Shown here piece after piece: positions 6,301 through 57,506 of a stretch of DNA of 64,000 bases. How positions within the stretch are numbered: the first letter of the stretch is position 1; the number at the start of each line of letters is the position of its first letter. Position numbers and translations under genes: made by a program. The notes below the pieces were generated by a model. That model was not told where the DNA came from and did no database searches. It saw only the letters and a program-made list of their open reading frames with translations. The DNA comes from Iphione sp. A-MEVVRFRX5 (lineage: Eukaryota), in contig OZ320319.1 of assembly GCA_976226885.1 (NCBI GenBank), forward strand, positions 25,668,001-25,732,000, read 5' to 3'.

Positions 6301-6339
6301 CGGTCTGGCATGTCTCCATAACTGAGCAGGGCATGCATA

Positions 6340-6446
6340 GTGACGGCATGGATAACAGGGCGAGTCATTAGCGGATCGTTCAACCATGACAAGCACAGAG
6401 TATATAAGCCTGGCAGAATTGAGATCGACCTCTCACTCCTCGCATC
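6340..6446 (+). repeat. Split direct repeat A1 of element 1 (copy A2 at 10632-10738), containing TATA-like TATATAAG at 6401-6408
   Basis: Exact 107-bp direct repeat read from the sequence; TATA-like motif lies about 70 nt upstream of the gag ATG at 6475. Confidence 0.95.
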
Positions 6447-6474
6447 GGGACCAGAGAGAGCACAACGAGCCACG

Positions 6475-7782
6475 ATGTCTGCACCAGAGGACCTGACGAG
6501 CCAGGGCGAGCAACCACCGGCGAAGGAGAAGGCTGCCCGCCTGAAAGTCACAGAACGTCTAGATAGGCTTGAAAAAGCCATGGACGATATATCACAACTC
6601 AAATCTCACATTTTGTCTCTTTCAGCCACAATTGCTGCCAACCAGACCTTGCCTGATCCAGACCCAGACCCGAGCAACGAGGGCCAGCAGACTGACTCAG
6701 TACCAGGTCCTAGCGGCACCAGTTCACAGATCAACGGGAACAACATGCCGCTACAGAGAACCGGTTCTGTACCTGTCCCGACTACTTCTCAGCCCGCCGG
6801 CCAGCCTGAGGTGATGCAAGTACAGTACAACAGCCTACAGCCGAGACTGCTCGAGGGAACGTGCCCGTCAACAACCCCAGGGCTACATACAACAGTACCG
6901 CCCGTTCAGACGAGGACGCCGGCCACGTGGACACCAGCAATGCAGCATAATCCAGCCGCCATGCACCAGCCTACAGACTACTTCCCGAGGCGACAACAAC
7001 CGTCTACGACAGGCTACCTCCCGAACCCGGCAACACTTCGCAGCGGCGCCCCAGTGCAACACTACATAGACTCCTATTTGGAGGCCACCGCCCCATGGCT
7101 CCAACAGACAAATGAAAATCGAGGTAACGTTGACTTGAGGGTTCGCAGCCTCATCCCCAAACCCTATATGTACGTCCAGAAGGACGGGGTGACTACATTC
7201 AAACAAAAGAATGAATATAAGGAGAAAATCACATATCATGAATTTCTCCCTTCATATCTTATAATGTTAAAGGACGAGGCTGCAATCCCCAGTCAAGATA
7301 AGCCATACGTACTTGAACATTTATTGCATGTCACGCAGGACGCCCAGCGGCGCCCGTGGCATAATGTCAGACGGTGGACAAACAACATTTTCGACATGAT
7401 AGAAAGAAACGAAATAGGCTGGGCAAATTCTCATGAAATAGCATATGAACGGTTAATGGTATCAATGGCCCCTGTCGACCCAGCAGAAATAGTCGAGGTC
7501 CCATGTCTGTTGTTTAACACAGGTTCTTGTACACACAAAACTGACGCCCATGTAGAACAGGAGCTCAGATTGCTCCACGTATGCATGTTCTGCTATGCAC
7601 TCAGTGGAGCTCGACACACACACACAAATGTAGCATGTGGTAAACGCGCAAAAGCAGGACATATTGCCAAAGCAACCGGTCCACAACCCCAGAACACACA
7701 ACCGTTTCAAAAACAAAATCAGACAAGCAACTCACACCAAAACAACAACACTGCATACAGCAGACAGCCAAAAAACGATTAG
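6475..7782 (+). CDS. Gag-like ORF1 of element 1 (436 codons from ATG 6475); Q/P/T-rich N-half, Cys/His cluster near C-terminus
   Basis: Open frame 6340-7782; the ORF-track start is a GTG inside repeat A1 and the first ATG is at 6475 (MSAPEDL). Contains CLLFNTGSC...HVCMFC...HTHTNVAC. Confidence 0.85.
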   Translation: MSAPEDLTSQGEQPPAKEKAARLKVTERLDRLEKAMDDISQLKSHILSLSATIAANQTLPDPDPDPSNEGQQTDSVPGPSGTSSQINGNNMPLQRTGSVPVPTTSQPAGQPEVMQVQYNSLQPRLLEGTCPSTTPGLHTTVPPVQTRTPATWTPAMQHNPAAMHQPTDYFPRRQQPSTTGYLPNPATLRSGAPVQHYIDSYLEATAPWLQQTNENRGNVDLRVRSLIPKPYMYVQKDGVTTFKQKNEYKEKITYHEFLPSYLIMLKDEAAIPSQDKPYVLEHLLHVTQDAQRRPWHNVRRWTNNIFDMIERNEIGWANSHEIAYERLMVSMAPVDPAEIVEVPCLLFNTGSCTHKTDAHVEQELRLLHVCMFCYALSGARHTHTNVACGKRAKAGHIAKATGPQPQNTQPFQKQNQTSNSHQNNNTAYSRQPKND

Positions 7783-9623
7783 ATCAGGCCCCATTGAAAC
7801 AGGATGGGGTCAGTTCCCACAATAGCCGGGGACCAGACATCGATTTTCACTTGGTAAAACAAATATGTCAGACAGATGACTGTGACATAATGCACGCATG
7901 CACATTTGAGCAGCTGGCAAGATACAAAGCTAACACATGGCCACATATAGGGGTTACAGGCATAGATACACATCTCCTGTATATTTATAACGTAGTACGG
8001 GAGGATGGCCGCCCTAACTTACTGGGTGCAAGAATCCCAGTTCCGACAACAACTAATATCAAAGTTTGGCGAAATTACTTACAACAAGACAAGACTGATC
8101 CTCAGCTAATTGACCTCTTAACATACGGCTTTCCATTGGGGTATATGGGACCTGCTGATACGAAAGGAAAGAATACTAACCATCCATCAGCTAAGCAATT
8201 CCCAGAGGCTATAAATCAATACATCAAGAAAGAAATTGCCCTTGGAGCTGTTTTTGGTCCATTCCCTAACACTCCCTTCTCCCCTTGGATGCATATGTCA
8301 CCATTAATGACCCGCCCAAAGAGGGACTCATGTCAGCGTCGGGTAATCTTGGATATGTCCTATCCTGAGGAAGCCTCTGTGAATGCCTATATTGGCAAGA
8401 ATATGGTGCTGGGCGTGGTCAGGGACCATTCCCTGCCCACAGTCCAGGCACTTCTTGCTACAATTAGGCAGATGGGGGGTAACCCGTATTTGGCAACGGT
8501 GGACATAGCTCGGGCATACAGAAATTTCTCTACATGTCCTTTGGATTGGCCGCTTCTGGGGTTCGGATGGGATGGACAATACTATTTTGACACCGCCATC
8601 CCGTTCAGCTCCAGAAGCTCGGCCAATCATATGCAAAGGATTGCCGATGCTATAATCCGCATAATAGCGAGGGAAGGTATTAAAGGGTACATGTATCTCG
8701 ATGATCTCATACTTGTTGCAGAGGGACAACTAGAAGCGCAGTCAGCGTTTGATCGGGCGAGACAGCTCTTAACAGAGCTTGACCTCCCAGAAGCTGCTGA
8801 TAAGGCACAGACACCTGCACAAAAAGTCACTTGGTTGGGAATAGACATTAACACCAAAGAAATGACAGTGTCCATCCCCCCACGAAGGATACAAGAGATC
8901 CTAGAGGTAGTTCAAAAAGTCAGCAAACAAAAGACGGTCTTGAAACACGATTACCAGAGTTTGATCGGGAAAATACTGCAGGTAGCACGTTGCGTCTCCC
9001 CCGCCCGAGTCTTCGTAGGAAGACTACTAGCAAAACTAAGAGAACAAAAAGGGAGGTATGTTAGAATAGATCATGATGTCAGACTTGACCTGAGATGGTT
9101 TATTCGATACTTATCTGCCTGGAACGGGGTGGCTATTATCCCGGAAGTCCACGTCGATCGAGAAATTGTGGTAGATGCATGCTTAACAGGTATTGGCGGG
9201 GCGGACGACTGGTCGTACTACGCCGAGCCTACCCCGAGCTGTTGTGAAGGTTTTCACATAACCCAGATTGAGGCAACTAATTTGTTGGTAGCTGTTCTGT
9301 CTTTTGTTGGAAAAGATGATGCTGGCAAGATAGTAAAAGTAAGGTGTGACAATCTAGCAGCGGTTGATAGCTTCAAGTCAAGGAAAGCGAAAGACCCAGT
9401 CCTCCAAAAATGCGCCAGGTCATTGTGGTTGCATCAAGCGAATTATAGTGTCTCCATTGTGTATGAACATGTTCCAGGTGAATTTATGCTTCTAGCAGAT
9501 GCTTTGTCGAGATGGTACGACCACCCAAAGCATCGATTCACTGCATCTGATTTCATTCATCATAAACAGCTAAAACGCATTACACCATGTACTGATGAGG
9601 TAATGTTATGGCCTGATTTATGA
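7776..9623 (+). CDS. Reverse transcriptase / RNase H ORF2 of element 1
   Basis: RVILDMSYP, DIARAYR, PFSSRSS, YLDD, RNase H DACLTGIGG / ITQIEATNLL / CDNLAAV / ADALSR. Frame is open from 7644, overlapping the gag end in the -1 frame; start coordinate reflects the proposed frameshift entry. Confidence 0.93.
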   Translation, partial: RLDQAPLKQDGVSSHNSRGPDIDFHLVKQICQTDDCDIMHACTFEQLARYKANTWPHIGVTGIDTHLLYIYNVVREDGRPNLLGARIPVPTTTNIKVWRNYLQQDKTDPQLIDLLTYGFPLGYMGPADTKGKNTNHPSAKQFPEAINQYIKKEIALGAVFGPFPNTPFSPWMHMSPLMTRPKRDSCQRRVILDMSYPEEASVNAYIGKNMVLGVVRDHSLPTVQALLATIRQMGGNPYLATVDIARAYRNFSTCPLDWPLLGFGWDGQYYFDTAIPFSSRSSANHMQRIADAIIRIIAREGIKGYMYLDDLILVAEGQLEAQSAFDRARQLLTELDLPEAADKAQTPAQKVTWLGIDINTKEMTVSIPPRRIQEILEVVQKVSKQKTVLKHDYQSLIGKILQVARCVSPARVFVGRLLAKLREQKGRYVRIDHDVRLDLRWFIRYLSAWNGVAIIPEVHVDREIVVDACLTGIGGADDWSYYAEPTPSCCEGFHITQIEATNLLVAVLSFVGKDDAGKIVKVRCDNLAAVDSFKSRKAKDPVLQKCARSLWLHQANYSVSIVYEHVPGEFMLLADALSRWYDHPKHRFTASDFIHHKQLKRITPCTDEVMLWPDL

Positions 9624-10455
9624 TTTCCAGACCCAGTGGCACGTCGCCTGGTGGCGGAAGCGGAACGGCTAGTTGCCAGGGCAAGGTCGGCAGGTACACT
9701 TGCAAATAGGAAGTCAGCTACCCGAACTTATCTGTCCTTCTGTTTCCGTTTTAACGTTTCTCCACTACAGCCCACGGCACTACAGGCGTGTATGTATATA
9801 CGGTATCTTGCAAGCTTCTTAGCTAGCCCAGCATCTGTATCCAATGCTATTTCAGCCATAAGAGAGTATTTAAGAGACCACGACAGCCATGAATCAGGCT
9901 TTACGTCGAGGCAGGCCAAGTTGGCCCTCGACGCGGTAAATAGGAGTAAGCAGCATGTTGTTCAGAGGAAAAGACCGTTTGAATCGTCTGAGATTAAGAA
10001 AATATTGTATGCCACCCTCGCACAACCTTATGCACTCATCTTAAGGCTCGCTTTTATGTTGATGTTCTACAGGGGGCTGCGCCAGTCTGAGGTAGCCCCC
10101 CGCAGTGTTGTGTCCTTCGATCCTGATTGTCACCCAATGAGAGCTGACTTTGCTGTGGTAAATGGAAGACTAGTTGCGAGACAAAAGTGGTCCAAAACCC
10201 AGCAATTGTACTCACAAAATAGAGACATAGTCTTGCCCAGCTCGCAGGATCCTATACTATGCTGGTATTGACCCACAGGGCACATCATTACATAGCCTAC
10301 GACGTACTGCAGCAACGATTGCCTATCAGGAAGGGTGTGACGTGTTACAGGTCAAGCACTTTGGGACTTGGTCGTCGAACGCCTATCAAGCGTACGTTAG
10401 TACCAAGAATGCGTCTCAGGTGTCTGAGGTATTAGTAAATACTATAAACTCATAA
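9624..10455 (+). pseudogene. Tyrosine recombinase ORF3 of element 1, internally deleted and frameshifted near 10261
   Basis: N-part 9636-10271 has FYRGLRQSE (catalytic Arg box) and KWSKTQQ. Another frame from 10261 reads AGIDPQGTSLHSLRRTAAT...HFGTWSSNAYQAY to TAA 10453-10455 (H-x-x-R, H/W, Y). About 45-50 codons are missing relative to the element 2 YR. Confidence 0.9.
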
Positions 10456-10475
10456 TATCATAATTACACAAAGCT

Positions 10476-10956
10476 TGGCGAATTTTATCTCGATGTATCT
10501 CAATAATTTTAAACATTGTCTATTGACTGTATATTTATTCACATTTTACTGATCATGTGCAATAAAGAAGCACCCAAACTGTTTATAAACCCATGCCTCC
10601 ATAGTTATCTGTGGAACGAGAAGTGCTAATGGTGACGGCATGGATAACAGGGCGAGTCATTAGCGGATCGTTCAACCATGACAAGCACAGAGTATATAAG
10701 CCTGGCAGAATTGAGATCGACCTCTCACTCCTCGCATCCCACCCGCCACACCCTATATTTGTAACTATGTATCCATCTATTTGATACTATGTATTTACCT
10801 GGCGAATTTTATCTCGATGTATCTCAATAATTTTAAACATTGTCTATTGACTGTATATTTATTCACATTTTACTGATCATGTGCAATAAAGAAGCGCCCA
10901 AACTGTTTATAAACCCATGCCTCCATAGTTATCTGTGGAACGAGAAGTGCTAATGG
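10476..10956 (+). repeat. B1-A2-spacer-B2 terminal block of element 1; AATAAA in each B copy (10561-10566, 10885-10890)
   Basis: Direct repeat comparison as above. Confidence 0.95.
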
Positions 10957-34956: not shown

Positions 34957-36428
34957 GTGGTGTCGAACAATACCTTGCTTACATCTACCCCGAGAACACA
35001 GAATGGTTTTGATGAGATGACTGGTCAATACCCACTACCCCCTCGTGCAACTCCGGTGGATCCTCAGGATGCAGGTAGGCCTGACTCGTTTGACCATGTG
35101 AGTCTCACCTTATTGGAGGTGGGAAAAACTCTAGGGTTAGGTACTGATATGAACATACATGAACCTAGGCAACCTGAAATTAATGAAATGGATCTACATG
35201 GCATCCTTGCTATGGTAGTGCAGTCGCAGAATGAGATACAGCAAAGTTTAACTGATCTGCAGGAAAAGGCACAAAGTAGTCTGGCTCTAGGGAACCGATT
35301 ACAGAAATTAAAGACTCTGGCCTCGGTTGAAACAAAGATGGTATCGTTGACAAATACACTTGAGAAGTTATTGAAGAGTGACGAAGAGTGGAAGAAAAGC
35401 ATGACTGAAAAACAAAATTTAGCGATGCGGCGTGAACATGAGATGAATAGAAGAATGTATAATCTTGAGAAGCAGAATGATATGTTGAAGCGCAAGATGA
35501 ATCAGATGGAACTAGACTCTAGGAAATGTAATTTGCTGATAGACAATCTGCGAGAGATAGAAAGTGGAACAACGTGGGATCTAGTTGATGGTATTTTTAG
35601 ATGTGTCGACAGATTCTACAACTCTGACTCACTGTTGTCAGCTAAGAGGCTAGGCAGATTGGGGAAACGACCACGACCTATTCTGGTCCGCCTATCGTGT
35701 ATTGAGGCGAGGAATAGTATTTTGAGTAGGAGGGCGGAGTTACGTAAGGATGAATTGACAAGGTCAGTTTTCCTGAATGAGGACATTCCTGAAAGTCTAA
35801 AGGAAAAACACCGCCATTTGCATTTGATTGCTGAGCATGCACGTGGTCTAGGTTCCAAAGCCAGTGTAAGGGGGCTGTCGGTGAGGATTGATGGCGTTCT
35901 GTTTACGGAGGATAATATGAATTGTCTTCCTAAAGGAATATCGGTTGAGGAAGCGTGTATCAAGGAAGACGGTGTAAAGTTGGCATTCAGAGAGGAGCAT
36001 ACGGTATTTTCGGACTCTGCTCACACACCGTTCACCATTGGAGGTGACCGATTTGACTCTGTGGTACACTGGCTTTACTCTGAGAAAGCACGACTGGTAG
36101 GTGATAAGTCGCTAAGGCATCGAATTCTCTTAGAAGAAAATGCGCAGAAAGTCAAACAACTTGGCCGGTCTTGTCAACCACCACAGGACTGGGAGAAGCT
36201 TGAGCCTGAAGTTATTAAAACTGGCTAAAAGCAAAATTCTCTCAGAATAACCATGCATGTTCACTACTGAAGGGAACCTTGGCAAAGAAGATCATATTTG
36301 CCTCCAGGGACTCTAAAGCTAGTGCGGGTTGCAGTTTTCGTGACTTTGACCTGAGAAAGAGTGACTATACAGGTTCAAACCTATGTGGAGTATTGTTGGA
36401 AGAAGTTCGTGGCACCTTGACGAATTAA
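34957..36428 (+). CDS. LINE ORF1: coiled coil + RRM-like + C-terminal NADAR (YbiA-like) domain; 1-nt frameshift near 36226
   Basis: Heptad-rich region; RKCNLLIDNL, AKRLGR...RPRPILVRL, VFLNEDIPE; then FSDSAHTPFTIGGDRFDSVVHWLYSEKARLVGD...ILL...KQLGR...W. After the frameshift: KAKFSQN...LL.GT...ASRD...GSNLCGVLLEEVRGTL* (TAA 36426-36428). True start uncertain (GTG 34957). Confidence 0.8.
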
Positions 36429-36939
36429 TTGGTTAATCTCTACCAATCTTTTTTCCAGATTGATGGACTAATTGCTACGTGGTTGTTCATCAAAGGACAT
36501 GAGCCGTACTTGTGAGTAACCTTGATTTAAGACCTGGTCGGGTGTACTGCCGGTCTATATTGGAATTAGCAGCGTGGGTAGGTGTATATCCCGCTGGTGA
36601 CAAGACAAATATGACTTCTGATTGTATACTCTTCAAGCGTTAACTACAGTTATGCTATGAACGCTGGTGTGGATAGGTGTATATCCTGCTAGTGAGGATT
36701 TTGAACTATCCTTAAAATTCATGATGGTTTATTTTTTTAATAATTACTGCATTGATGTAATGGATACTGGTATAACATCATTTATGTATTATTAGCAAAT
36801 CGCTGTTATGATGTCATTATTTTTAATGTAAGTGGTGTGGTGATTGCAGCTCGGACGGTTGGCTTCTACTAGACACTACAGGCACTAGCGACCGGAAACG
36901 TAAGATTCTGGTAGAGGACAAGAACTGGAATAACGCAGT

Positions 36940-37608
36940 ATGAGTATGCGTAGTAAAGTGCTGATTCTAGCAGATTCTAGGGGCAGATATTTAAATGAGT
37001 ACCTTCGACATGAGTGGCTTAATATGCACAATATATATGTTGACGTATATTTTAAGCCTGGAGCATCATTAGATACGATACTAAGTGCTTTGTTGTATTA
37101 TGATCTCTCTTCGTATAGTTTGATTTATATTTTTGCTGGCATTACAAGTATCTGCACGAGGGATAGCTATACTAAGTTATTGCTCCCTACCTTTGACAAT
37201 GTCAAGTCATGGACATTGTGGTTTACAACATTTAATTGGAAAATGTGTAGTAAGCTTGCCTCTGTGGACGGCTGTCCCCGAGTTGGTTACTTACCTATAA
37301 TGAGCATAAATTGGAGAGTGTACAGTAGTGATACATATTCTGAAGAGCGTCAGGTGTATGTATCGAACTGTGTGAAAGAGATGAATGGGATTATACATGA
37401 ATTTAATGACAATATGGGCATGTATACTGCAGGTACGGCCGAGCCAGTCCATCACTTCCAAGGTAGGCGCTATCGGTCTAAATTCAAGTATTTATGGGAT
37501 GGCTGCCACCCTAACCATGAAGCCTTGCGTGACTGGGGTGTTAGTATCACTCGAGCTATATCATTGATGTTTGGAGTTGGGGCTGTACATCCAGGGCATG
37601 CTTGGTGA
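36940..37608 (+). CDS. Free-standing SGNH/GDSL-type hydrolase (esterase) ORF, 222 aa
   Basis: Block I VLILADSRG, block II KPGA, block III-like FAGITSI, block V WDGCHP; ATG start and uninterrupted. Confidence 0.8.
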   Translation: MSMRSKVLILADSRGRYLNEYLRHEWLNMHNIYVDVYFKPGASLDTILSALLYYDLSSYSLIYIFAGITSICTRDSYTKLLLPTFDNVKSWTLWFTTFNWKMCSKLASVDGCPRVGYLPIMSINWRVYSSDTYSEERQVYVSNCVKEMNGIIHEFNDNMGMYTAGTAEPVHHFQGRRYRSKFKYLWDGCHPNHEALRDWGVSITRAISLMFGVGAVHPGHAW

Positions 37609-37652
37609 GTAGGAACATTATATTACCTCTGCTTGCTACCAATATCGTTACT

Positions 37653-40436
37653 ATGACAGTGTTGCATGTGGGCATGTGGAACTGCTGTAGTATCTTAGGG
37701 AAATTAACAGAAATATCAGCTTTGTTACGAGATGAAAAAATTGATGTCTTTGGTATTTGTGAAACTTGGCTAACAAATACGTTGCCAACGGGTATACTGG
37801 AGCAGCCAGGTTATAGTGTCTATCGTTTGGATAGAGACAGGATTGCGGTAAATAAGAAATGGGGCGGAGGGTTACTAATATATGTTAGGTCTGAATGGAT
37901 TGCAGAAGTAATTTCAGATGGTAGTTGGATGAGTCCGGATGGTGAAATTTTATGTCTGAAATTCAAGCCTGGGATGAGAAAGTGGCATTTATTATTCTTG
38001 GTATATAGGTTACCTAATGGAAACTTAGTAAACTTCCTGGATACATTACAAAGACTAGTGTTGTCCGTAAATAAGAATCATAAATACAAATTGACAATTT
38101 TAGGGGACTTTAACGTTGATATGTTAAAAAGCTCGAATCAAAGACGTAAATGTAATTCTATGGCCTCCTATCTTTCCTTGCACCAGGTTGTGTGTTGTAG
38201 TACTCATGATAATGGTGGATGTCTCGACCATGTGTATGCATCTGGGGACATTAAAAAGTGGAGAGTATGGAATAATGGTCTAAGTGACCATAAGATAGTT
38301 TGTGTAGATTACAAGAAGCTGGGAGCTAAGTTAAATAAAAGAAGGTATATTTGGAGACGAGACTCACGTGCTTACAATTTCCCATTATTGTGTGAAATGT
38401 TAAATGAATGTGACTGGGTTGGGGATTGTGAGGAGGTAGAGGTAATGTGGGAATGTTGGAAACACAACTGCATAGCAGTTCTTGATAAAATTGCCCCCTT
38501 ACAAAAAATTGAAGTCTGGGGAAATGAGTCTATAGTTCTTAAACCATTAATTATGCAGTGGAGAAAAGAGCGTATTTACTTTCGTAAAAAATGGATTCGT
38601 ACAGGCGTACAGGAGTACAAACATATTTCGAATTATTATCGGAACTTGATAAATAAAGAGATCAGGAAAGATCAAAGGGCAAACTTTCTAGGTAAATTAC
38701 GAAAATGTGGTCAAAATGAAAGAAGTTTCTGGTCGTTGGTAAATGAAGTAGTTTTTGGAAAGGTGAAAAAGACTAAGAATGTAAGTGTACGTGTGGATGG
38801 AGTATTATATGAAAATGAGGATGTGCCTGGAGTCATGAATCAATTCTTTATCGATAATGTAGGAAAACTAGCAAGATCTACCAAAACAGTGCATGGGGAT
38901 ATATATGTGCCTGCAAGTGAGTGTGAGTGTGTGATGAATGAATTTACAGAGGTGACATATAGTGAAACTGCCAAACTAATATCACTGTTGAAAATGTCTA
39001 AACCGTCAGGCTTGGAGTCAATAAGTATGAGATACATGAAAGATTGTCTTAAAGGAACTTTATACTACTTTACGTCCCTGCTTAATGTGTCGCTCAGGTG
39101 TGGTGTAATACCGAGCGACTGGAAAGCAGGTGTCGTGGTACCATTATTTAAGAATGGCAGTGTCATTGAATGTTCCAACTACAGGCCTGTTACGTTATTG
39201 CCGGCTCCCTCAAAGATTTTAGAAGAGGTAGTTCTTAAAAGAGTCAATATATTTGTAGAAAAGAATCAAATTCTGAATGCAGGACAATTTGGTTTCAGAG
39301 CTGGTCGAAGTACTATATCTGCTGCAGGCTATATGCTAAAACATGTTTATGATGCAATAAATGATGGAAAATATGTTGCTGCTGCATATCTTGATATGTC
39401 CAAGGCGTTCGACCTGGTAGACCACAAAACATTATTACAGAAATTATCTAGTTACGGCTTTAAGGGATTGGTGCTAAGGTGGTTTAGAGCATATTTGAGT
39501 AACAGGGTTCAATGTGTAAAAGTAAATGGTAGTATTTCATCTTCATTAAAAGTAACCACTGGGGTTCCCCAGGGCTCCATCTTGGGGCCCTGGCTTTTTA
39601 TTATCATGATTAATGATATTTTTAGGAGTATTTCACTATCTCGCCTAGTAATTTATGCTGATGATATAACGGTGGTATCTACCGGGTCGAGCGCCTTGGC
39701 ACTTAGGACAAAACTACAACTAGTGTTGAAACAAATACATACCTGGTGTTGCAATAATGCTCTTCTCTTAAATTTTAGTAAATCAAAGATAATGACCTTC
39801 GGCAAAGCGAAAGACTTTGTATTGGATGTTGCTATTGGTGATGCACACCTAGAGCAGGTTGAAACTTTCAAATTTTTAGGCTTGCATATTAACAATGATT
39901 TAAGTTTCTCTGAAATGGTGCAATACAAGGTCAAAAAACTGCAACAGGTATCATATTTAATAAGGCGTTCTTGCTTTTTGCTGGATATGAACTTGAGGAG
40001 GCAACTATTTGTAGCATGTATAACGCCGCATTTAGACTATGGATTAGCATTTGTTGTCGGTGCTACAAGGATTGACTTCACTAAGTTGGAAAATGCATGG
40101 TACAGAGCAATACGTTCATGTGTATTGGGTTTCTGGGAGGGTAGAACTGCAATCCTGAACTGGCTAGCTCTAAACAAAATACGAGATATGCGCAACAGAC
40201 TTGAATGTCACTTGTTACAATTAATTACAGATTTGTATGGTTTAGGAATATGTGAAAAAAGACCTATTGGTATCATGAGAAGGAGTACTAGTGTGCAGCT
40301 AGTATATGATAGGCCAAGGTTAAGTGTGTATCGGAATAGTTTTCTTGTAGAAGGGATTAGATTGTGGAATGAACTACCCACTGAGATACGGTGTTTAAAT
40401 AGCAAAGCTATCAAAGGGTTTATTAGTAAAAGGTGA
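37653..40436 (+). CDS. LINE ORF2: APE endonuclease + reverse transcriptase, uninterrupted
   Basis: MWNCCS, ICETWL, GGGLLIYV, LGDFNVD, LDHVY, SDH; YRPVTLL, QFGFR, LDMSKAFD, GVPQGSILGP, YADD, SFLVEGIRLWNELP. First ATG at 37653 (ORF track starts at GTG 37602). Confidence 0.95.
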   Translation: MTVLHVGMWNCCSILGKLTEISALLRDEKIDVFGICETWLTNTLPTGILEQPGYSVYRLDRDRIAVNKKWGGGLLIYVRSEWIAEVISDGSWMSPDGEILCLKFKPGMRKWHLLFLVYRLPNGNLVNFLDTLQRLVLSVNKNHKYKLTILGDFNVDMLKSSNQRRKCNSMASYLSLHQVVCCSTHDNGGCLDHVYASGDIKKWRVWNNGLSDHKIVCVDYKKLGAKLNKRRYIWRRDSRAYNFPLLCEMLNECDWVGDCEEVEVMWECWKHNCIAVLDKIAPLQKIEVWGNESIVLKPLIMQWRKERIYFRKKWIRTGVQEYKHISNYYRNLINKEIRKDQRANFLGKLRKCGQNERSFWSLVNEVVFGKVKKTKNVSVRVDGVLYENEDVPGVMNQFFIDNVGKLARSTKTVHGDIYVPASECECVMNEFTEVTYSETAKLISLLKMSKPSGLESISMRYMKDCLKGTLYYFTSLLNVSLRCGVIPSDWKAGVVVPLFKNGSVIECSNYRPVTLLPAPSKILEEVVLKRVNIFVEKNQILNAGQFGFRAGRSTISAAGYMLKHVYDAINDGKYVAAAYLDMSKAFDLVDHKTLLQKLSSYGFKGLVLRWFRAYLSNRVQCVKVNGSISSSLKVTTGVPQGSILGPWLFIIMINDIFRSISLSRLVIYADDITVVSTGSSALALRTKLQLVLKQIHTWCCNNALLLNFSKSKIMTFGKAKDFVLDVAIGDAHLEQVETFKFLGLHINNDLSFSEMVQYKVKKLQQVSYLIRRSCFLLDMNLRRQLFVACITPHLDYGLAFVVGATRIDFTKLENAWYRAIRSCVLGFWEGRTAILNWLALNKIRDMRNRLECHLLQLITDLYGLGICEKRPIGIMRRSTSVQLVYDRPRLSVYRNSFLVEGIRLWNELPTEIRCLNSKAIKGFISKR

Positions 40437-47440: not shown

Positions 47441-47820
47441 CCCACCTTTTTCTACATTGCTAGCAGAGAGGCCTCATGTAAGCTTTCTTGTGTACCAGTA
47501 CCAGCTGCCCTTATCTGACCCTTGTCCCATTAGAACATATACGTTCTCCATATTTCTCTTGGTTCACCAGGACTCCAACTATCCGCTGTGTCTCTCCCTC
47601 CTTCATCCTAATCTTTGCCTATAGCCCGGTCTTCCAAATCGTTCTCTCTTCATCTTCTATTCGTTTTTTTTACTTGAAGTCCTATCCCTCAAAATTCTGC
47701 TGCATCTTCCGTGTCTATTATTTTTCCCCAACTTCTTCCTAGTACTTTTTTCGCTATTATAAGCAGTTTATAGAATAGTAAAAGATATAGATATAATAAT
47801 AGATATAATAGATATAATTT

Positions 47821-53671: not shown

Positions 53672-54628
53672 ATGATGGCGAAGCATTGTTCTAAGTGTAA
53701 CAAGAGACATTCCCCTCCGGTGGGGAAAAAGTGCCGTCATTTTGTTGATGATATCGAGGAGTCGTCGATGGATTTTCCTGTTTGCTCTGATTTTACAGGT
53801 GTTATCGATGATGCTCGGTCTGGTGAAAAAGTGACTCCCCAAAATGGTAGCGATGCTGTCTCCTCCTTGACACAACGTATTGGTAAATTGGAGGACATGA
53901 TAACGATGTTGGTAATGACGAAAGATTCATCGACATCGAATGCGGAGAAGGCTGCCGTTGGCGACGCAACTTTGAGCAAGCCGGATGTTGGTGAGAATTC
54001 AACTGACGATTCCTCATCAGATTCAAGTTCAAGTGATAGTGATGATGAAGATCGAAAGAAGCATAAGAGTAGATCAAAGTCGAGTAAAAAGACATTTAAT
54101 ATAGCTAAAGCTGCGAAAGTCAAGAAGATCGATAATTTTGATCAACTTATGCTCGGTTCTATAAATCTTGTGCAGCGACACCTGAAACGTAATGACGACA
54201 TTTCCGGTTATCTGGCACATCTGCAGTTTCTGTTAGAGAAACGAGTGAAAAACGTGTATAAGGATGCCTCCTTTATTGATTACGACAAAGATATTAGAAA
54301 AAAGGCAGCAAAGAAAGGTATTGCAAGCTTTAAGTTTGGCGATGATGAGCTTATTAGGAGCCACTTTTCGTTTGACATGATGCTGGGGGGTGGTTCGGCA
54401 ACAGGTCGTGGTGCTCAAAGTAAACAAAAGCCAAAGCGTCAAAACGACTTTTCTCGTAAATCAGACAAAGTTTGCTATCGTTTCAACAATGGAACTTGTC
54501 ATGACTCAAATTGCAATTTTAAGCATGCTTGTTTAGTGTGTGGCGGCTCAGACCACAGGGCCTATGAGTGTTCTCAAAACATTAATAATGCTGACAAATC
54601 CAAGGAAGCGAAGTCTAGTAAGAAGTGA
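53672..54628 (+). CDS. Gag-like ORF1 of element 2 (318 aa)
   Basis: N-terminal CSKCNKRH...C; C-terminal CCCH finger CYRFNNGTCHDSNCNFKH followed by CCHC knuckle CLVCGGSDHRAYEC. Confidence 0.9.
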   Translation: MMAKHCSKCNKRHSPPVGKKCRHFVDDIEESSMDFPVCSDFTGVIDDARSGEKVTPQNGSDAVSSLTQRIGKLEDMITMLVMTKDSSTSNAEKAAVGDATLSKPDVGENSTDDSSSDSSSSDSDDEDRKKHKSRSKSSKKTFNIAKAAKVKKIDNFDQLMLGSINLVQRHLKRNDDISGYLAHLQFLLEKRVKNVYKDASFIDYDKDIRKKAAKKGIASFKFGDDELIRSHFSFDMMLGGGSATGRGAQSKQKPKRQNDFSRKSDKVCYRFNNGTCHDSNCNFKHACLVCGGSDHRAYECSQNINNADKSKEAKSSKK

Positions 54629-56581
54629 CTATGTGACGACCCTATCAATACAGATCCTTTTTGTTGTTCTTTTCAAGTAAGAGCATTCCCAAGTTTGGAG
54701 ATGTATTGTACTATGACATGCCCCCTTAAAGTTGAGCATATGTTGGATGTCAACATGCTCAAGGGTTTTGCTTTGGATAATAATCTTGGTGATAAGTGGC
54801 ATATTGTGGATGTATGTGATAACCACAAATTGTTAGAATATTGTTCCTCCGCAGGGGTTAACTATAATTTGCCGCTATATATTGTATTTAATTCTAATGA
54901 TGTGATTAGAATTTATAAAGATTGTATGAACAATTCGTGCTGCTGTGTTCACCATGTCGGTGGAGTGAGAAGTAAGCTACTGCCCTGTCGTTTTTTCCGT
55001 GGATGTGCCTTTGGTATGTTAGATGCGAGCACTAGGGAATTTGTCTGGGATGGGGTTTGTGTCGGTTTCAAGATAGTACAGGATGGTTTTGAAGGCTCGT
55101 ATTTTTGCAAAAATTATAAAACCATCGAAGAGGAGCCGTTTCGTAGTGAAATGGATGAAAAAATTTTGAAGGAGTTGGATAGTGGTTTCATTTCTATGGT
55201 GAAGAATGTCCCCCGGTGTGTCCATGCCATGGGAGGGGTGCCTAAAGGAGATGGGTCACTCCGCCCTATCACAGACTGTTCGAGGCCAGAGGGTAGATCA
55301 ATTAATAATTTCATGGAAGGCCTGTATGAGAATTTCAGTTATAGCTCTGTGAGTGATGTGTGTGAGTTCTTGGAGGAAGGGGATTTCATGAGTGTAGTAG
55401 ATATTAGTAGTGCTTATCGCTCAGTAAGTGTGAGAGAGTCATGCAGGAAATTTCAGGGTTTTTGTTGGTACCTTAATGGAGAGAGGAAGTATTTTGTAAG
55501 TAATACCTTGACGTTTGGTCTGAAGTGTGCACCTTACATTTTTACCAAGTTGTCGGATTTCGTGGTGCAGGAGTATGTTTGGAGATCAAATGATAGCATT
55601 GTGAATTACCTGGATGATTTCTTGGTAAGGGGTGACAGTTTTGAGTCGTGTATGAGAAACAGAGGTTTTCTTACGGATATAATTGGTAATCTTGGTTTTG
55701 ATGTTTCGTGGAAAAAGGTGACTGACCCTAGCAAAAAATGTGTGTTTTTAGGGATAGAGATCGATAGTGAGGATATGGTATTGCGTCTCCCAGAGGGCAA
55801 ATTAGAGAAGATGCGGTTGATCTTTGAAGAAGTGATTGATTCAAAGAAGATGTCAAGGAAAGAGGGTGAAAAAGTCTCAGGTTTTCTCTCTCATTGTTTG
55901 ACTATTAGCAGTGGAGGGAGGACTTTCTGTAGGGCCTTGTATGATTTTGTGGAGGATTTGCCTAAGAATAATAAGAGGTCATTGATCAGAGATGAGGTAT
56001 TAGAAGATCTTAAATGGTGGTCAGTCTTTGCAAAATTGTTTAATGGTAAAGGGAAAATCCTTCATTGTCAAACTCCAAAGTTTGTTTGTTATACAGATTC
56101 GTCCTTTAGTGGTTTTGCTGGTGCCTGTGATGAAGACTGGTTCATTGGTTCATGGAATGGTGTTTCTGATGAGGTCGGTTGTGGACACAGGGAGAAGGTG
56201 CCTTTAAGTTGGGGAGATGAGAGGAATATAAATGTGTTTGAACTTTGGCCGGTTCTGGTTTCTCTGAAGAGATGGAGTCATTGTTGGAAGGGTAGTCATG
56301 TGCTCTTCATGGTAGACAATACACAAGTGATGTTTATGCTAAGAACTGGAAGGAGCATAAACAAAGTGTGTATGGGTTGGCTCAAAGAAATTTTTTGGGT
56401 TTGTATGGTTTATGATATTAGTATTTCGAGTGAGTATGTCAATACTAAAGACAACATTGTTGCAGATACTCTATCTAGAATTGATGTTGCTTGTGTTTCG
56501 GATGAAAGATGGCTAGAGTGGTCAGGAAGAGCATGTTGTAAGGAAGTTTTGGTTGGTTCCAGGTCTTCGAAGTTGCCTTGA
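54629..56581 (+). CDS. RT / RNase H ORF2 of element 2 (same frame as gag, directly after its TGA)
   Basis: RPITDCS, DISSAYR, TFGLKCAP, YLDDF, TDSSFSGF, INVFELWPV, VDNTQV, ADTLSR. No in-frame stop between TGA 54626-54628 and the ORF; first ATG at 54701. Confidence 0.93.
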   Translation, partial: LCDDPINTDPFCCSFQVRAFPSLEMYCTMTCPLKVEHMLDVNMLKGFALDNNLGDKWHIVDVCDNHKLLEYCSSAGVNYNLPLYIVFNSNDVIRIYKDCMNNSCCCVHHVGGVRSKLLPCRFFRGCAFGMLDASTREFVWDGVCVGFKIVQDGFEGSYFCKNYKTIEEEPFRSEMDEKILKELDSGFISMVKNVPRCVHAMGGVPKGDGSLRPITDCSRPEGRSINNFMEGLYENFSYSSVSDVCEFLEEGDFMSVVDISSAYRSVSVRESCRKFQGFCWYLNGERKYFVSNTLTFGLKCAPYIFTKLSDFVVQEYVWRSNDSIVNYLDDFLVRGDSFESCMRNRGFLTDIIGNLGFDVSWKKVTDPSKKCVFLGIEIDSEDMVLRLPEGKLEKMRLIFEEVIDSKKMSRKEGEKVSGFLSHCLTISSGGRTFCRALYDFVEDLPKNNKRSLIRDEVLEDLKWWSVFAKLFNGKGKILHCQTPKFVCYTDSSFSGFAGACDEDWFIGSWNGVSDEVGCGHREKVPLSWGDERNINVFELWPVLVSLKRWSHCWKGSHVLFMVDNTQVMFMLRTGRSINKVCMGWLKEIFWVCMVYDISISSEYVNTKDNIVADTLSRIDVACVSDERWLEWSGRACCKEVLVGSRSSKLP

Positions 56582-57506
56582 GGATCGATTGGAAGTCCTG
56601 AGGAGCCAAGCCTTCTCTAAAAACACCTTAAAGACAAGGCAAAGGCAGCAGAGAGTCTACATGAAGTTTTGTGAGAAGTTTGGTTATGCACCTTTTCCAT
56701 GTGGTCAAAAGCAACTGAAGCAGTATTGTGCCTTCTTGTCCTTTTCTATGTGTCCTAATTCAGTCCAGAATTACCTGAGTGGTTTGATGTACGAACATAA
56801 GAAATTGGGATTGGAATGTCCAGTTCTAGATGATGATATCAGATGGGTGATCCAGGGTTTTAAGAGAATTCATTCTTTACCCTCTAGATCTTCGGATGGT
56901 TTCTCTTTAGAGAATCTACTGAATATGTACAATGGTTTGAAGTTTAATTCAATTTTTGATGTTGTTTTTTGGGGAGCAACAGTGTTGGCTTTCCGGTGTC
57001 TTCTCAGGAAGAGACAATATACTGGGCGTGATGGAATTTGTAGAGGTGATGTGGATTTCCTGGTAGATAGAATGATTGTCAACATTAGGAAATCTAAAAC
57101 TGACCAGTATGGTATCTGTCCTAGGAAACTGGTTGTGTCTCCTTGTAGTAACAGAATTTTTTGTGCCATTTTCTGGTTGAAGATGATTTTTTCTCTGGTT
57201 AAAGTTGATTCAAAAATGCCTTTGTTTTCTTTTGTCGAACATGGTAAGTTTACTTACCTGGATTATGATAGGTTTGAGCTAAAGCTTACTAGCCTGGCTT
57301 CAACTGTAGGTTGTGAGGGCAAGTTTACTTCTCATTCCTTACGTAGGGGTGGTGCTACACATATGGCACGTATTGGCATGCCTGTTCATTCCATTAAACA
57401 TAGAGGTGGATGGAAGAGTGATGTAGTTTACACTTACATTAAACCTACATCAGACCAAATGTTAGTTAGTGATGCAAAATTTTGTTCTTCTTTGGGGTTG
57501 GCCTAA
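56553..57506 (+). CDS. Tyrosine recombinase ORF3 of element 2
   Basis: FRCLLRK (R box), RKSKTDQ, HSLRRGGAT (H-x-x-R), HRGGWKSDVVYTY (W...Y); no ATG until 56661. Confidence 0.93.
   Translation: MVPGLRSCLEDRLEVLRSQAFSKNTLKTRQRQQRVYMKFCEKFGYAPFPCGQKQLKQYCAFLSFSMCPNSVQNYLSGLMYEHKKLGLECPVLDDDIRWVIQGFKRIHSLPSRSSDGFSLENLLNMYNGLKFNSIFDVVFWGATVLAFRCLLRKRQYTGRDGICRGDVDFLVDRMIVNIRKSKTDQYGICPRKLVVSPCSNRIFCAIFWLKMIFSLVKVDSKMPLFSFVEHGKFTYLDYDRFELKLTSLASTVGCEGKFTSHSLRRGGATHMARIGMPVHSIKHRGGWKSDVVYTYIKPTSDQMLVSDAKFCSSLGLA

What the first reader, a model, noticed from the sequence alone, without database searches (positions are those of the whole stretch)
7765..7815. Canonical -1 frameshift signal (A_AAA_AAC + GC-rich hairpin) linking gag to RT in YR element 1
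Seen: gag ends cag ccA AAA AAC gat TAG, with the heptamer at 7770-7776 correctly phased as X_XXY_YYZ one codon before the stop. The RT frame is the -1 frame, open from 7644 and lacking an ATG at its start. Ten nt downstream, GGCCCCAT (7787-7794) pairs with ATGGGGTC (7804-7811): 8 bp with one G-U and a 9-nt loop. Knowledge: A_AAA_AAC is the MMTV/HTLV gag-pro slippery site. Inference: a Gag-RT/RH fusion (...QPK[K/N]RLDQAPLKQ...) made by programmed -1 frameshifting. I do not know of this being demonstrated for Ngaro-type elements.
Basis: partly seen in the sequence, partly recalled or inferred. Interest (0 to 1): 0.8.

Follow-up and report, generated by a model that had tools for sequence, protein, structure and literature searches.

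The report
Conserved -1 frameshift site, Ngaro retrotransposon
A tyrosine-recombinase (Ngaro-type) retrotransposon very probably makes its reverse transcriptase as a Gag-RT fusion by a classical retrovirus-style -1 ribosomal frameshift; the signal is conserved in dozens of very divergent relatives, so the mechanism is ordinary but I found no description of it for this order of elements.

Summary
The gag ORF (6475-7782) ends ...CCA AAA AAC GAT TAG, with A_AAA_AAC (7770-7776) in gag phase. The RT/RH ORF lies in the -1 frame, open from 7644 and without an ATG. A hairpin (7787-7795 / 7803-7811; -15 kcal/mol, z -4.6) starts 10 nt after the heptamer.

- I examined 65 relatives: 21 found by homology and 35 by motif in this genome, plus 9 from other organisms. 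They share 24-80% gag and 30-73% RT amino-acid identity with the window copy.
- Almost all keep the same cassette, C-AAAAAAC-GAN-stop, in gag phase with RT in the -1 frame, while the flanks are unconserved.
- Each lineage has a different GC-rich stem starting 5-10 nt downstream.
- Mean folding energy has one sharp minimum just after the heptamer in two independent sets (p 1e-6 to 3e-9). It is absent at 12 chance copies of the same 14-mer.
- The conserved RT N-terminus lies upstream of any in-frame ATG.

No pseudoknot is supported. No RNA data were available and nothing is shown experimentally. It is a new member of a known kind. First readers noted the same signal in three other windows of this genome. 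This copy's recombinase gene is broken. A second YR lineage in the window instead has a conserved in-frame UGA-CUA stop.

The parts
6337..6446 (+). Split direct repeat A1, the 5' terminus of the element
   Evidence: 110-nt direct repeat, 99% identical to A2 at 10629-10738.
6475..7782 (+). gag-like ORF (435 aa from the first ATG). It has a Cys/His-rich knuckle-like motif near the C-terminus, then an A/C-rich Q/N-rich tail, and ends at TAG 7780-7782.
   Evidence: No Pfam hit. The C-terminal 190 aa are 44-80% identical to the relatives found by homology.
7769..7782 (+). Conserved 14-nt cassette C-AAAAAAC-GAT-TAG: the slippery heptamer 7770-7776 plus one codon and the gag stop
   Evidence: outside the anchored heptamer, C at -1 is 93% conserved, G+7 90%, A+8 87%, T+10 83%, A+11 90%; 59 genomic sites against 12 for the reversed control.
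7770..7776 (+). Slippery heptamer A_AAA_AAC in gag phase
   Evidence: Conserved in 21 of 23 homology-seeded relatives (AAAAAAT in one), all 9 external relatives (AAAAAAT in one) and 35 motif-seeded relatives.
7777..7786 (+). 10-nt spacer, containing the gag stop
   Evidence: Family range is 5-10 nt, median 7.
7787..7811 (+). Stimulatory stem-loop: 5' arm 7787-7795, loop 7796-7802, 3' arm 7803-7811 (9 bp, two G-U pairs)
   Evidence: dG -15.0, z -4.64; the family-wide folding-energy minimum sits exactly here.
7813..7833 (+). Second small hairpin (6 bp). It is not conserved in relatives and is probably incidental.
   Evidence: Relatives show no equivalent hairpin.
7776..9623 (+). RT/RNase H ORF in the -1 frame (frame open from 7644). 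It has no ATG before the conserved N-terminal motif IDFxLVxxIC.
9636..10455 (+). Tyrosine recombinase gene, broken. The N-terminal part is in the frame of 9636-10271; the catalytic C-terminal part (LHSLRR ... Y) is in another frame, about 10231-10455. Relatives have about 45-55 aa more between the two parts.
   Evidence: the two pieces match Phage_integrase profile positions 4-42 and 127-160 only.
10476..10956 (+). 3' split direct repeats B1 (10476-10632), A2 (10629-10738) and B2 (10800-10956)
   Evidence: B1/B2 99% identical, A1/A2 99% identical.

Best explanation
This is a programmed -1 ribosomal frameshift (PRF) site at the gag/pol junction of an Ngaro-type tyrosine-recombinase retrotransposon. 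Most ribosomes translating gag pass the heptamer and stop at TAG 7780-7782, giving Gag. A minority are held up by the hairpin at 7787-7811 while AAA and AAC occupy the P and A sites. Their tRNAs re-pair one base back on AAA AAA, and translation continues in the -1 frame with CGA TTA GAT... This yields a Gag-RT/RNase H fusion (...QPKN-RLDQAPLK...) at a fixed low ratio to Gag, as in retroviruses. Shown: the anatomy, its conservation, the position-specific structure and the lack of an alternative start codon. Inferred: that slippage really occurs, its efficiency, and that the hairpin is the stimulator.
For: (1) Anatomy in the window.
(2) Homology-seeded relatives in the same genome (23 distinct loci). 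Twenty-one carry AAAAAA[C/T] at the junction, and 16 meet all three criteria by script: in gag phase, RT in the -1 frame, stop 0-9 codons downstream. The other five have the cassette plus unrelated lesions.
(3) Nine relatives from other organisms (39-45% RT identity, absent from this genome) all have the heptamer 0-2 codons before the gag stop, and seven pass all three checks as the genes were called.
(4) Of 47 further genomic sites of the 14-mer, 35 lie between gag and RT homology. The heptamer is in gag phase in 28 of 29, and RT is in the -1 frame in 31 of 35. The other 12 equal the chance count given by the reversed-pattern control.
(5) Synonymous positions are fixed. The Lys codon is always AAA. 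The preceding codon is NCA whatever amino acid it encodes (Pro, Ser, Ala or Thr). Asn is AAC in 28 of 30 copies.
(6) Mean folding energy of 50-nt windows has one sharp minimum directly after the heptamer. It is -17.7 against about -8 kcal/mol across 1.6 kb in 30 copies. It is -14.8 against -9.5 (p 3e-9) in 33 independent copies, and -6.0 at the 12 non-element motif sites (p 4e-6). Against RT-internal controls: p 9e-7 for energy and 7e-5 for z-score.
(7) Stem sequences differ completely between lineages but always pair, e.g. CCAGUUCCCC/GGGGAACUGG, GGGGCCG/CGGCCCC and GAGCCUG/CAGGCUC. GGCAGGC/GCCUGCC against GGCAGAC/GUCUGCC is a G-C to A-U double change.
(8) The -1 frame has no upstream ATG in 22 of 30 copies. 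The conserved RT motif starts about 24 codons after the heptamer, and the first Met often lies beyond it or is absent within 110 codons. In several copies the -1 frame opens only 9-15 nt before the heptamer, and in two the stop abuts it. Across the family the only place where a shift can occur is a stretch of about 16 nt containing the heptamer.
(9) Lesions behave as expected. AAAAAAT-GA in L004 makes a -1 frame TGA. L010 has seven A's and an in-frame gag-RT fusion.
(10) A_AAA_AAC is among the shiftiest heptamers for eukaryotic ribosomes. MMTV, IAPs, BLV, HTLV-1/2, BIV and EIAV use it with 6-9 nt spacers (PMC5009743 and PMC3835772).
Against: There is no experimental or expression evidence: no RNA run was listed, so no reads could be laid. 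The window copy's 10-nt spacer is at the long end of the family range and longer than the 6-9 nt tabulated for retroviruses with this heptamer, and its stem is only 9 bp with two G-U pairs. No formal covariation statistic could be computed because loop lengths differ too much for alignment; the 'covariation' here rests on predicted stems plus energy statistics. Part of the cassette's conservation (GAN-stop) could be due to dual coding (Gag K-N-D/E; Pol K-K-R-V/L). This copy has a broken recombinase gene and may no longer be expressed.
Confidence: 0.88

Rival explanations
1. Transcriptional slippage. The polymerase stutters on the A6 run and adds one A to a fraction of transcripts, which puts RT in frame with gag (as in potyvirus P3N-PIPO at GAAAAAA). 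No ribosomal slippage would be needed.
For: A one-base insertion gives the same frame as a -1 shift. One relative (L010) carries seven A's in its DNA and an in-frame gag-RT fusion. The run is conserved at exactly six A's and is bounded by C on both sides.
Against: Transcriptional slippage would need neither the conserved, position-locked downstream stem-loop nor the strict X_XXY_YYZ phasing with C at position 7. Both are hallmarks of ribosomal frameshifting. From general knowledge, slippage by cellular RNA polymerase II on only six A's is not an established way to express a gene. L010 is most simply an ordinary insertion mutation.
Confidence: 0.04
2. RT is translated independently of gag, by internal or non-AUG initiation, by termination-reinitiation at the nearby gag stop, or from a spliced subgenomic mRNA.
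For: The gag stop lies only one codon after the heptamer, and the stem-loop could in principle act in reinitiation. Another first-reader note proposes splicing for the recombinase ORF of this element (s1-322286; untested).
Against: There is no ATG in the RT frame near the junction in most copies, and the conserved RT N-terminus precedes the first Met. What is conserved is a slippery heptamer in gag phase, not a start codon or a splice acceptor.
Confidence: 0.04
3. The signal is inherited and intact in sequence, but in this particular copy it is a silent relic. The element is non-autonomous or untranscribed, so no frameshifting takes place here today.
For: The recombinase gene of this copy has an internal deletion and a frame change. 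No close paralogue (above about 75% DNA identity) was found in the genome. No RNA run was listed.
Against: The gag and RT ORFs are both uninterrupted. The split direct repeats are 99% identical, which indicates a recent insertion. Heptamer, stop and hairpin are all intact. This reading concerns present activity, not what the signal is.
Confidence: 0.3
4. A chance heptamer and hairpin with no function.
For: A single in-phase X_XXY_YYZ in a 136-nt A-rich overlap has a chance of roughly 0.2. AAAAAAC is common in the window (28 sites). A second AAAAAACGANTAG in the window (47657-47669, minus strand) is unrelated to any element.
Against: Conservation across 65 relatives with unconserved flanks, fivefold genomic enrichment of the 14-mer, and the position-specific structure.
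Confidence: 0.01

Closest known systems
Retroviral gag-pro / gag-pol -1 PRF sites that use A_AAA_AAC (MMTV and IAP gag-pro, BLV and HTLV-1/2 gag-pro, BIV and EIAV gag-pol)
   Same: The heptamer is identical and in the same phase at the end of gag. The downstream enzymatic ORF is in the -1 frame and has no start codon. A GC-rich structure follows a few nucleotides downstream. The expected outcome is a fixed Gag to Gag-Pol ratio (PMC3835772 table and PMC5009743).
   Different: The host element is a tyrosine-recombinase retrotransposon with no protease and no DDE integrase, so the fusion is Gag-RT/RH only. The stimulator appears to be a plain, often bulged stem-loop rather than the H-type pseudoknot of MMTV. 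The 0-frame stop sits 0-2 codons after the heptamer in 28 of 30 copies. The window copy's spacer is 10 nt, against 6-9 nt.
-1 PRF sites predicted in animal LTR retrotransposons (2003 bioinformatic survey summarised in PMC5009743: 28 of 51 animal elements have pol in the -1 frame with classical heptamers)
   Same: Retrotransposon gag/pol overlap, classical heptamers, and inference from comparative sequence rather than from experiment.
   Different: That survey covered Ty1/copia, Ty3/gypsy and BEL elements. The passages that mention retrotransposons in the held text of the 2016 recoding review (the first 300,000 of 449,034 characters) do not mention DIRS, Ngaro or tyrosine-recombinase elements.
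Ngaro / DIRS-order retrotransposons as described in the literature (PMC3266345, PMC3783388, PMC6681497, PMC9210276, PMC8547959)
   Same: gag-like ORF, RT/RH ORF and YR ORF in that order; split direct repeats A1...B1A2...B2; no methyltransferase domain.
   Different: The papers note only that ORFs 'overlap' or are 'frameshifted', mostly for YR. [quoted passage not shown] None describes a slippery site or a stimulatory structure.
Second YR-retroelement lineage in the same window (53672-57506)
   Same: Same element order and gene order. It also needs recoding to express RT after gag.
   Different: gag and RT are in the same frame, separated by a single conserved UGA followed by CUA (18 of 20 relatives). 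That is a stop-codon readthrough context, not a frameshift. Its RT is only 21% identical to that of element 1.

Membership tests
Canonical eukaryotic -1 programmed ribosomal frameshift signal | Slippery heptamer X_XXY_YYZ in the phase of the upstream ORF | tested here: met
   A_AAA_AAC at 7770-7776 in gag phase. In phase in 16 of 21 homology-seeded copies by script, with the rest carrying lesions, and in 28 of 29 motif-seeded copies that have a gag hit.
Canonical eukaryotic -1 programmed ribosomal frameshift signal | Downstream ORF in the -1 frame, overlapping the upstream ORF, with no initiation codon of its own | tested here: met
   RT frame open from 7644 with no upstream ATG. The conserved RT motif precedes the first Met in the window and in many relatives. 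RT is in the -1 frame in 31 of 35 motif-seeded copies.
Canonical eukaryotic -1 programmed ribosomal frameshift signal | Stable RNA structure beginning about 5-9 nt after the heptamer | tested here: met
   Window: 9-bp hairpin, dG -15, z -4.6, spacer 10 nt, slightly long. Family: first pair 5-10 nt after the heptamer, and a unique energy minimum at that position in two independent sets.
Canonical eukaryotic -1 programmed ribosomal frameshift signal | Conservation of the signal among homologues beyond what coding constraint explains | tested here: met
   Synonymous positions are fixed, the flanks are unconserved, and the stems are kept by different sequences. A formal covariation test was not possible.
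Canonical eukaryotic -1 programmed ribosomal frameshift signal | Measured trans-frame product that depends on the heptamer and the structure | not testable with these tools
   No RNA run was listed. This needs a reporter assay or mass spectrometry.
H-type pseudoknot stimulator (MMTV-like) | Hairpin-loop bases pair with sequence 3' of the stem | tested here: not met
   The window loop GAAACAG has no downstream complement. Across 30 copies the best loop-to-downstream helix is 4.13 bp, against 3.98 bp in shuffles. This was a simple contiguous-helix test only.
Ngaro-type YR retrotransposon (DIRS order) | Split direct repeat termini A1 ... B1 A2 ... B2 | tested here: met
   A1 6337-6446 and A2 10629-10738; B1 10476-10632 and B2 10800-10956; each pair 99% identical.
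Ngaro-type YR retrotransposon (DIRS order) | Gene order gag, RT/RH, YR, with a tyrosine recombinase instead of a DDE integrase and no protease | tested here: met
   RVT_1 in ORF2. Both YR pieces give weak Phage_integrase hits, and H-x-x-R and Tyr are visible. Relatives have 265-304 aa YR ORFs. No protease or integrase domain was found. The YR of this copy is broken.
Ngaro-type YR retrotransposon (DIRS order) | Absence of the methyltransferase domain of DIRS1-like and PAT-like elements | tested here: met
   Pfam at E up to 5 finds only RVT_1 in the 615-aa ORF2, which has no room for a domain of about 280 aa.
Ngaro-type YR retrotransposon (DIRS order) | Phylogenetic placement of RT or YR with reference Ngaro elements | not tested
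   No named reference sequences were available; all database relatives are unnamed.

The most novel reading that the evidence does not exclude
This would be the first documented programmed -1 frameshift for the whole DIRS/Ngaro order. It defines a large, old clade spread over several organisms that keeps an invariant 14-nt cassette (C-AAAAAAC-GAN-stop). In that cassette the immediately following 0-frame stop and the C before the run would be functional parts of the signal rather than coding by-products. A sister YR lineage in the same genome uses UGA-CUA readthrough, so recoding mode has switched within the order. The dozens of natural 'same heptamer, different stem' variants would form a ready-made series for studying how stem-loop stimulators set frameshift efficiency.
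Probability: 0.35. Interest if true: 0.6.

Novelty: new member of a known kind. Interest (0 to 1): 0.45.

Why it matters
How tyrosine-recombinase retrotransposons express their proteins is almost unstudied. The papers I could search only remark that ORFs overlap. This finding gives a concrete, testable expression mechanism for one large Ngaro-like clade. It extends the retroviral Gag / Gag-Pol ratio logic, with the very heptamer used by MMTV and HTLV, to an element order that has no protease or integrase. It also gives annotators a 14-nt marker for the gag/pol junction. The many natural stem variants behind one invariant slippery site, and the neighbouring lineage with a conserved UGA-CUA stop, make a useful comparative system for recoding research. 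The mechanism itself is textbook.

Tried and rejected
- The gag protein word search found nothing (the length window is limited, so this is not evidence of absence).
- No RNA sequencing run was listed for the locus. Read laying was therefore not used, and neither expression, A-insertion nor splicing could be checked.
- MAFFT plus RNAalifold on six relatives gave no consensus structure, because loop lengths differ and the 3' arms do not align. I did not pursue a covariance model or the count of structure pairs, and relied on energy statistics with positional and negative controls instead.
- Pseudoknot: no support.
- The second AAAAAACGANTAG in the window (47657-47669, minus strand) has no gag or RT homology around it and is chance.
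- Twelve of 47 extra genomic 14-mer sites are not in elements, matching the reversed-pattern control. I used them as negative controls.
- Literature searches for Ngaro, DIRS or tyrosine-recombinase elements with frameshift or slippery terms found no description of a PRF signal. The original Ngaro paper (Goodwin and Poulter 2004) is not held, so a remark there cannot be excluded.
Full report
**Observation**

The gag-like ORF is 435 aa from the ATG at 6475 and ends CAG CCA AAA AAC GAT TAG, with the stop at 7780-7782. AAAAAAC at 7770-7776 is phased A_AAA_AAC in the gag frame.

The next ORF lies in the -1 frame. That frame is open from 7644, has no ATG before the heptamer, runs to 9623 and carries a reverse transcriptase domain.

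GGCCCCAT (7787-7794) pairs with ATGGGGTC (7804-7811). ViennaRNA adds a U-G pair, giving 9 bp and a 7-nt loop. The hairpin alone folds at -15.0 kcal/mol with z -4.64, and none of 200 shuffles is as stable. A second small hairpin follows at 7813-7833. The spacer is 10 nt. Taken alone, one in-phase heptamer in an A-rich 136-nt overlap would not be significant (and simple arithmetic). The case rests on comparison.

**The element**

- Split direct repeats A1 (6337-6446), B1 (10476-10632), A2 (10629-10738) and B2 (10800-10956) bound the element. Each pair is 99% identical.
- The gene order is gag, RT/RH, tyrosine recombinase.
- There is no methyltransferase, protease or DDE integrase domain.

These are the structural hallmarks of Ngaro-type elements as the literature describes them (PMC3266345, PMC7192593, PMC9210276). 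I did not test phylogenetic placement.

The recombinase gene of this copy is broken. Its N-terminal and catalytic parts lie in different frames, and about 45-55 residues present in relatives are missing.

**Relatives found by homology in the same genome**

A DNA search of the window's genome with 7400-8200 gave 23 distinct loci besides the window. None is close (best 66-73% DNA identity). Protein identity to the window is 44-80% for the gag C-terminus and 44-73% for the RT N-terminus.

- DNA similarity disappears between the gag C-terminal domain and the RT core, except for one short island.
- Twenty-one loci have AAAAAA[C/T] at the junction, nearly always followed by GAN and a stop.
- Sixteen meet all criteria by script: heptamer in gag phase, RT in the -1 frame, stop just downstream.
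- The other five have the cassette plus unrelated lesions: a premature stop four codons upstream of the codon that ends in the heptamer's first A, gag frameshifts, and downstream decay.
- Two heavily degraded loci lack the cassette.

Two variants are instructive. L004 reads AAAAAAT-GA, a CpG-type change that creates TGA in the -1 frame. L010 has seven A's, which fuses gag and RT in frame.

**Relatives from elsewhere**

The RT ORF finds 293 unnamed proteins at up to about 49% identity, and every one I looked up came from one ENA assembly or two Logan runs. I fetched nine encoding contigs at 39-45% RT identity. Two of them, one from each kind of source, were searched against this genome and matched it only over short stretches of the RT core at about 70-76% identity, so these contigs come from other organisms.

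- All nine have the heptamer (one reads AAAAAAT) 0-2 codons before the gag stop.
- In the seven where the called gag and RT genes allow the check, it is in gag phase with RT in the -1 frame and a stem starting 5-9 nt downstream.

**An independent, motif-seeded sample**

The 14-mer CAAAAAACGAKTAG occurs 59 times in the genome, against 12 for the reversed control. I fetched the 47 sites not already analysed.

- Thirty-five lie between gag and RT homology, with gag identity down to 24% and RT identity down to 30%.
- Twelve do not, which is the number expected by chance.
- The heptamer is in gag phase in 28 of 29 copies with a gag hit.
- RT is in the -1 frame in 31 of 35.

**Selection at the RNA level**

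In the 30-copy anchored profile, positions outside the heptamer are also conserved: C at -1 (93%), G+7 (90%), A+8 (87%), T+10 (83%) and A+11 (90%). Everything further out is close to random.

Synonymous positions are fixed as well:

- The Lys codon is always AAA.
- Asn is AAC in 28 of 30 copies.
- The preceding codon is NCA whether it encodes Pro, Ser, Ala or Thr.

**Structure**

The 60 nt downstream fold at a mean of -19.7 kcal/mol, against -10.7 for 63 RT-internal control windows (p 9e-7). Mean z is -2.0 against -0.45 (p 7e-5). The first pair lies 5-10 nt after the heptamer in every copy.

A sliding 50-nt window over -600 to +1000 in 30 copies shows a single sharp minimum directly after the heptamer: -17.7 against a background near -8, with no other window below -12. 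The stretch just upstream is unusually unstructured.

The result repeats in the 33 non-redundant motif-seeded copies. The mean is -14.8 against -9.5 (p 3e-9). It is absent at the 12 non-element copies of the same 14-mer (-6.0, p 4e-6).

Stem sequences differ entirely between lineages yet always pair:

| 5' arm | 3' arm |
|---|---|
| CCAGUUCCCC | GGGGAACUGG |
| GGGGCCG | CGGCCCC |
| GAGCCUG | CAGGCUC |
| GCACG | CGUGC |
| CCGGCC | GGCCGG (with variable inner helices) |

GGCAGGC/GCCUGCC against GGCAGAC/GUCUGCC is a G-C to A-U double change. A formal covariation test failed, because loop-length differences prevent alignment.

A simple test for loop-to-downstream pairing gives no support for a pseudoknot: 4.13 bp against 3.98 bp in shuffles. 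In the window, the 7-nt loop has no downstream complement.

**No alternative route to RT**

- In 22 of 30 copies the -1 frame has no ATG upstream of the heptamer.
- The conserved RT N-terminal motif (IDFxLVxxIC) begins about 24 codons after the heptamer.
- The first in-frame Met often lies beyond that motif, or is absent within 110 codons.
- In several copies the -1 frame opens only 9-15 nt before the heptamer, and in two the gag stop abuts it.

Across the family, the only stretch in which ribosomes can change frame is therefore about 16 nt and contains the heptamer.

**Mechanism and rivals**

The best explanation is classical simultaneous-slippage -1 PRF. It would produce Gag and a minor Gag-RT/RH fusion with the junction ...QPKN|RLDQAPLK. 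My confidence is about 0.88.

- Transcriptional slippage on the A6 run would reach the same frame. It explains neither the phased heptamer with C at position 7 nor the position-locked stem (about 0.04).
- Independent initiation, reinitiation or splicing is not supported by anything that is conserved (about 0.04).
- Chance is excluded.
- Separately, this particular copy may be a silent, non-autonomous relic, because its recombinase gene is broken. Its gag, RT and frameshift signal are nonetheless intact and its terminal repeats are 99% identical.

Nothing was measured. No RNA run was listed.

**Comparison with what is known**

A_AAA_AAC is among the most shift-prone heptamers for eukaryotic ribosomes. 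It is the gag-pro or gag-pol site of MMTV, IAPs, BLV, HTLV-1/2, BIV and EIAV, with 6-9 nt spacers (PMC5009743 and PMC3835772). Many animal LTR retrotransposons are predicted to use -1 PRF.

For tyrosine-recombinase retroelements the searchable literature says only that ORFs overlap or are frameshifted. One paper says Ngaro elements usually have no overlaps. The passages found in the held text of the 2016 recoding review do not mention these elements. The original Ngaro paper is not held.

I therefore rate this a new member of a known kind. It is well supported, conventional in mechanism, and apparently undescribed for this order.

**Relation to the rest of the scan**

First readers noted the same kind of signal in three other windows of this genome: s1-349320, s1-356252 and s1-349356. 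None of these had been followed up. One of them proposes an H-type pseudoknot, which my family-wide test does not support.

**Side finding**

The other YR element in the window (53672-57506) has gag and RT in the same frame, separated by one TGA followed by CTA. In all 20 genomic relatives examined the two ORFs are in the same frame with a single stop: 18 read TGA-CTA, one TGA-CTG and one TAA-CTA. Nineteen have no further stop before the RT homology. From general knowledge, UGA-CUA is a recognised readthrough-promoting context. Two YR lineages in one window thus appear to use different recoding strategies.

Noticed in passing
window 53672-57506, junction at 54626-54631: A second YR retroelement: gag 53672-54628 with CCCH and CCHC zinc motifs, RT 54695-56581, and YR 56553-57506 with a Phage_integrase hit. 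Its gag and RT are in the same frame, separated by a single TGA followed by CTA. All 20 genomic relatives (44-87% aa identity) keep the in-frame stop: 18 read TGA-CTA, one TGA-CTG and one TAA-CTA, and 19 have no further stop before RT. This looks like conserved programmed stop-codon readthrough at gag/pol.
   Followed up: partly
window 9636-10455: The tyrosine recombinase gene of element 1 is broken. The N-terminal part ends at the stop 10269-10271. The catalytic part (LHSLRR ... AYQAY) continues in another frame to 10455. Relatives have about 45-55 residues more between the two parts, and Pfam profile positions 43-126 are unmatched. Another first-reader note (s1-322286) proposes that this ORF starts at a splice site; I did not test that.
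   Followed up: partly
window 6337-10956: Element 1 has 99% identical terminal repeat pairs, which suggests a recent insertion. Yet the genome search found no other copy above about 75% DNA identity over the 801-nt query spanning the gag/RT junction. The family consists of many deeply divergent, low-copy lineages.
   Followed up: no
about +750 to +975 nt after the heptamer in relatives (window roughly 8530-8750): Within the RT coding region, 50-60 nt windows fold somewhat more stably than the background in both copy sets (means -11 to -13 kcal/mol). Individual copies reach -30 kcal/mol with z -5. This could be a GC-rich coding segment or a second conserved structure.
   Followed up: no
L010 (G000:C13, about 79752709): A relative with seven A's instead of six at the slip site, which fuses gag and RT into a single open frame of more than 600 codons. 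It is a natural one-base insertion equivalent to a constitutive frameshift.
   Followed up: no
window 47657-47669, minus strand: A second exact match to AAAAAACGANTAG, inside an A8 run. There is no gag or RT homology nearby, so it is a chance occurrence.
   Followed up: yes
window 34957-40436: A LINE with an endonuclease/RT ORF (37602-40436). Upstream are an ORF with a weak NADAR-like match (34957-36228) and a 222-aa ORF (36940-37608). Other first-reader notes already flag these.
   Followed up: no
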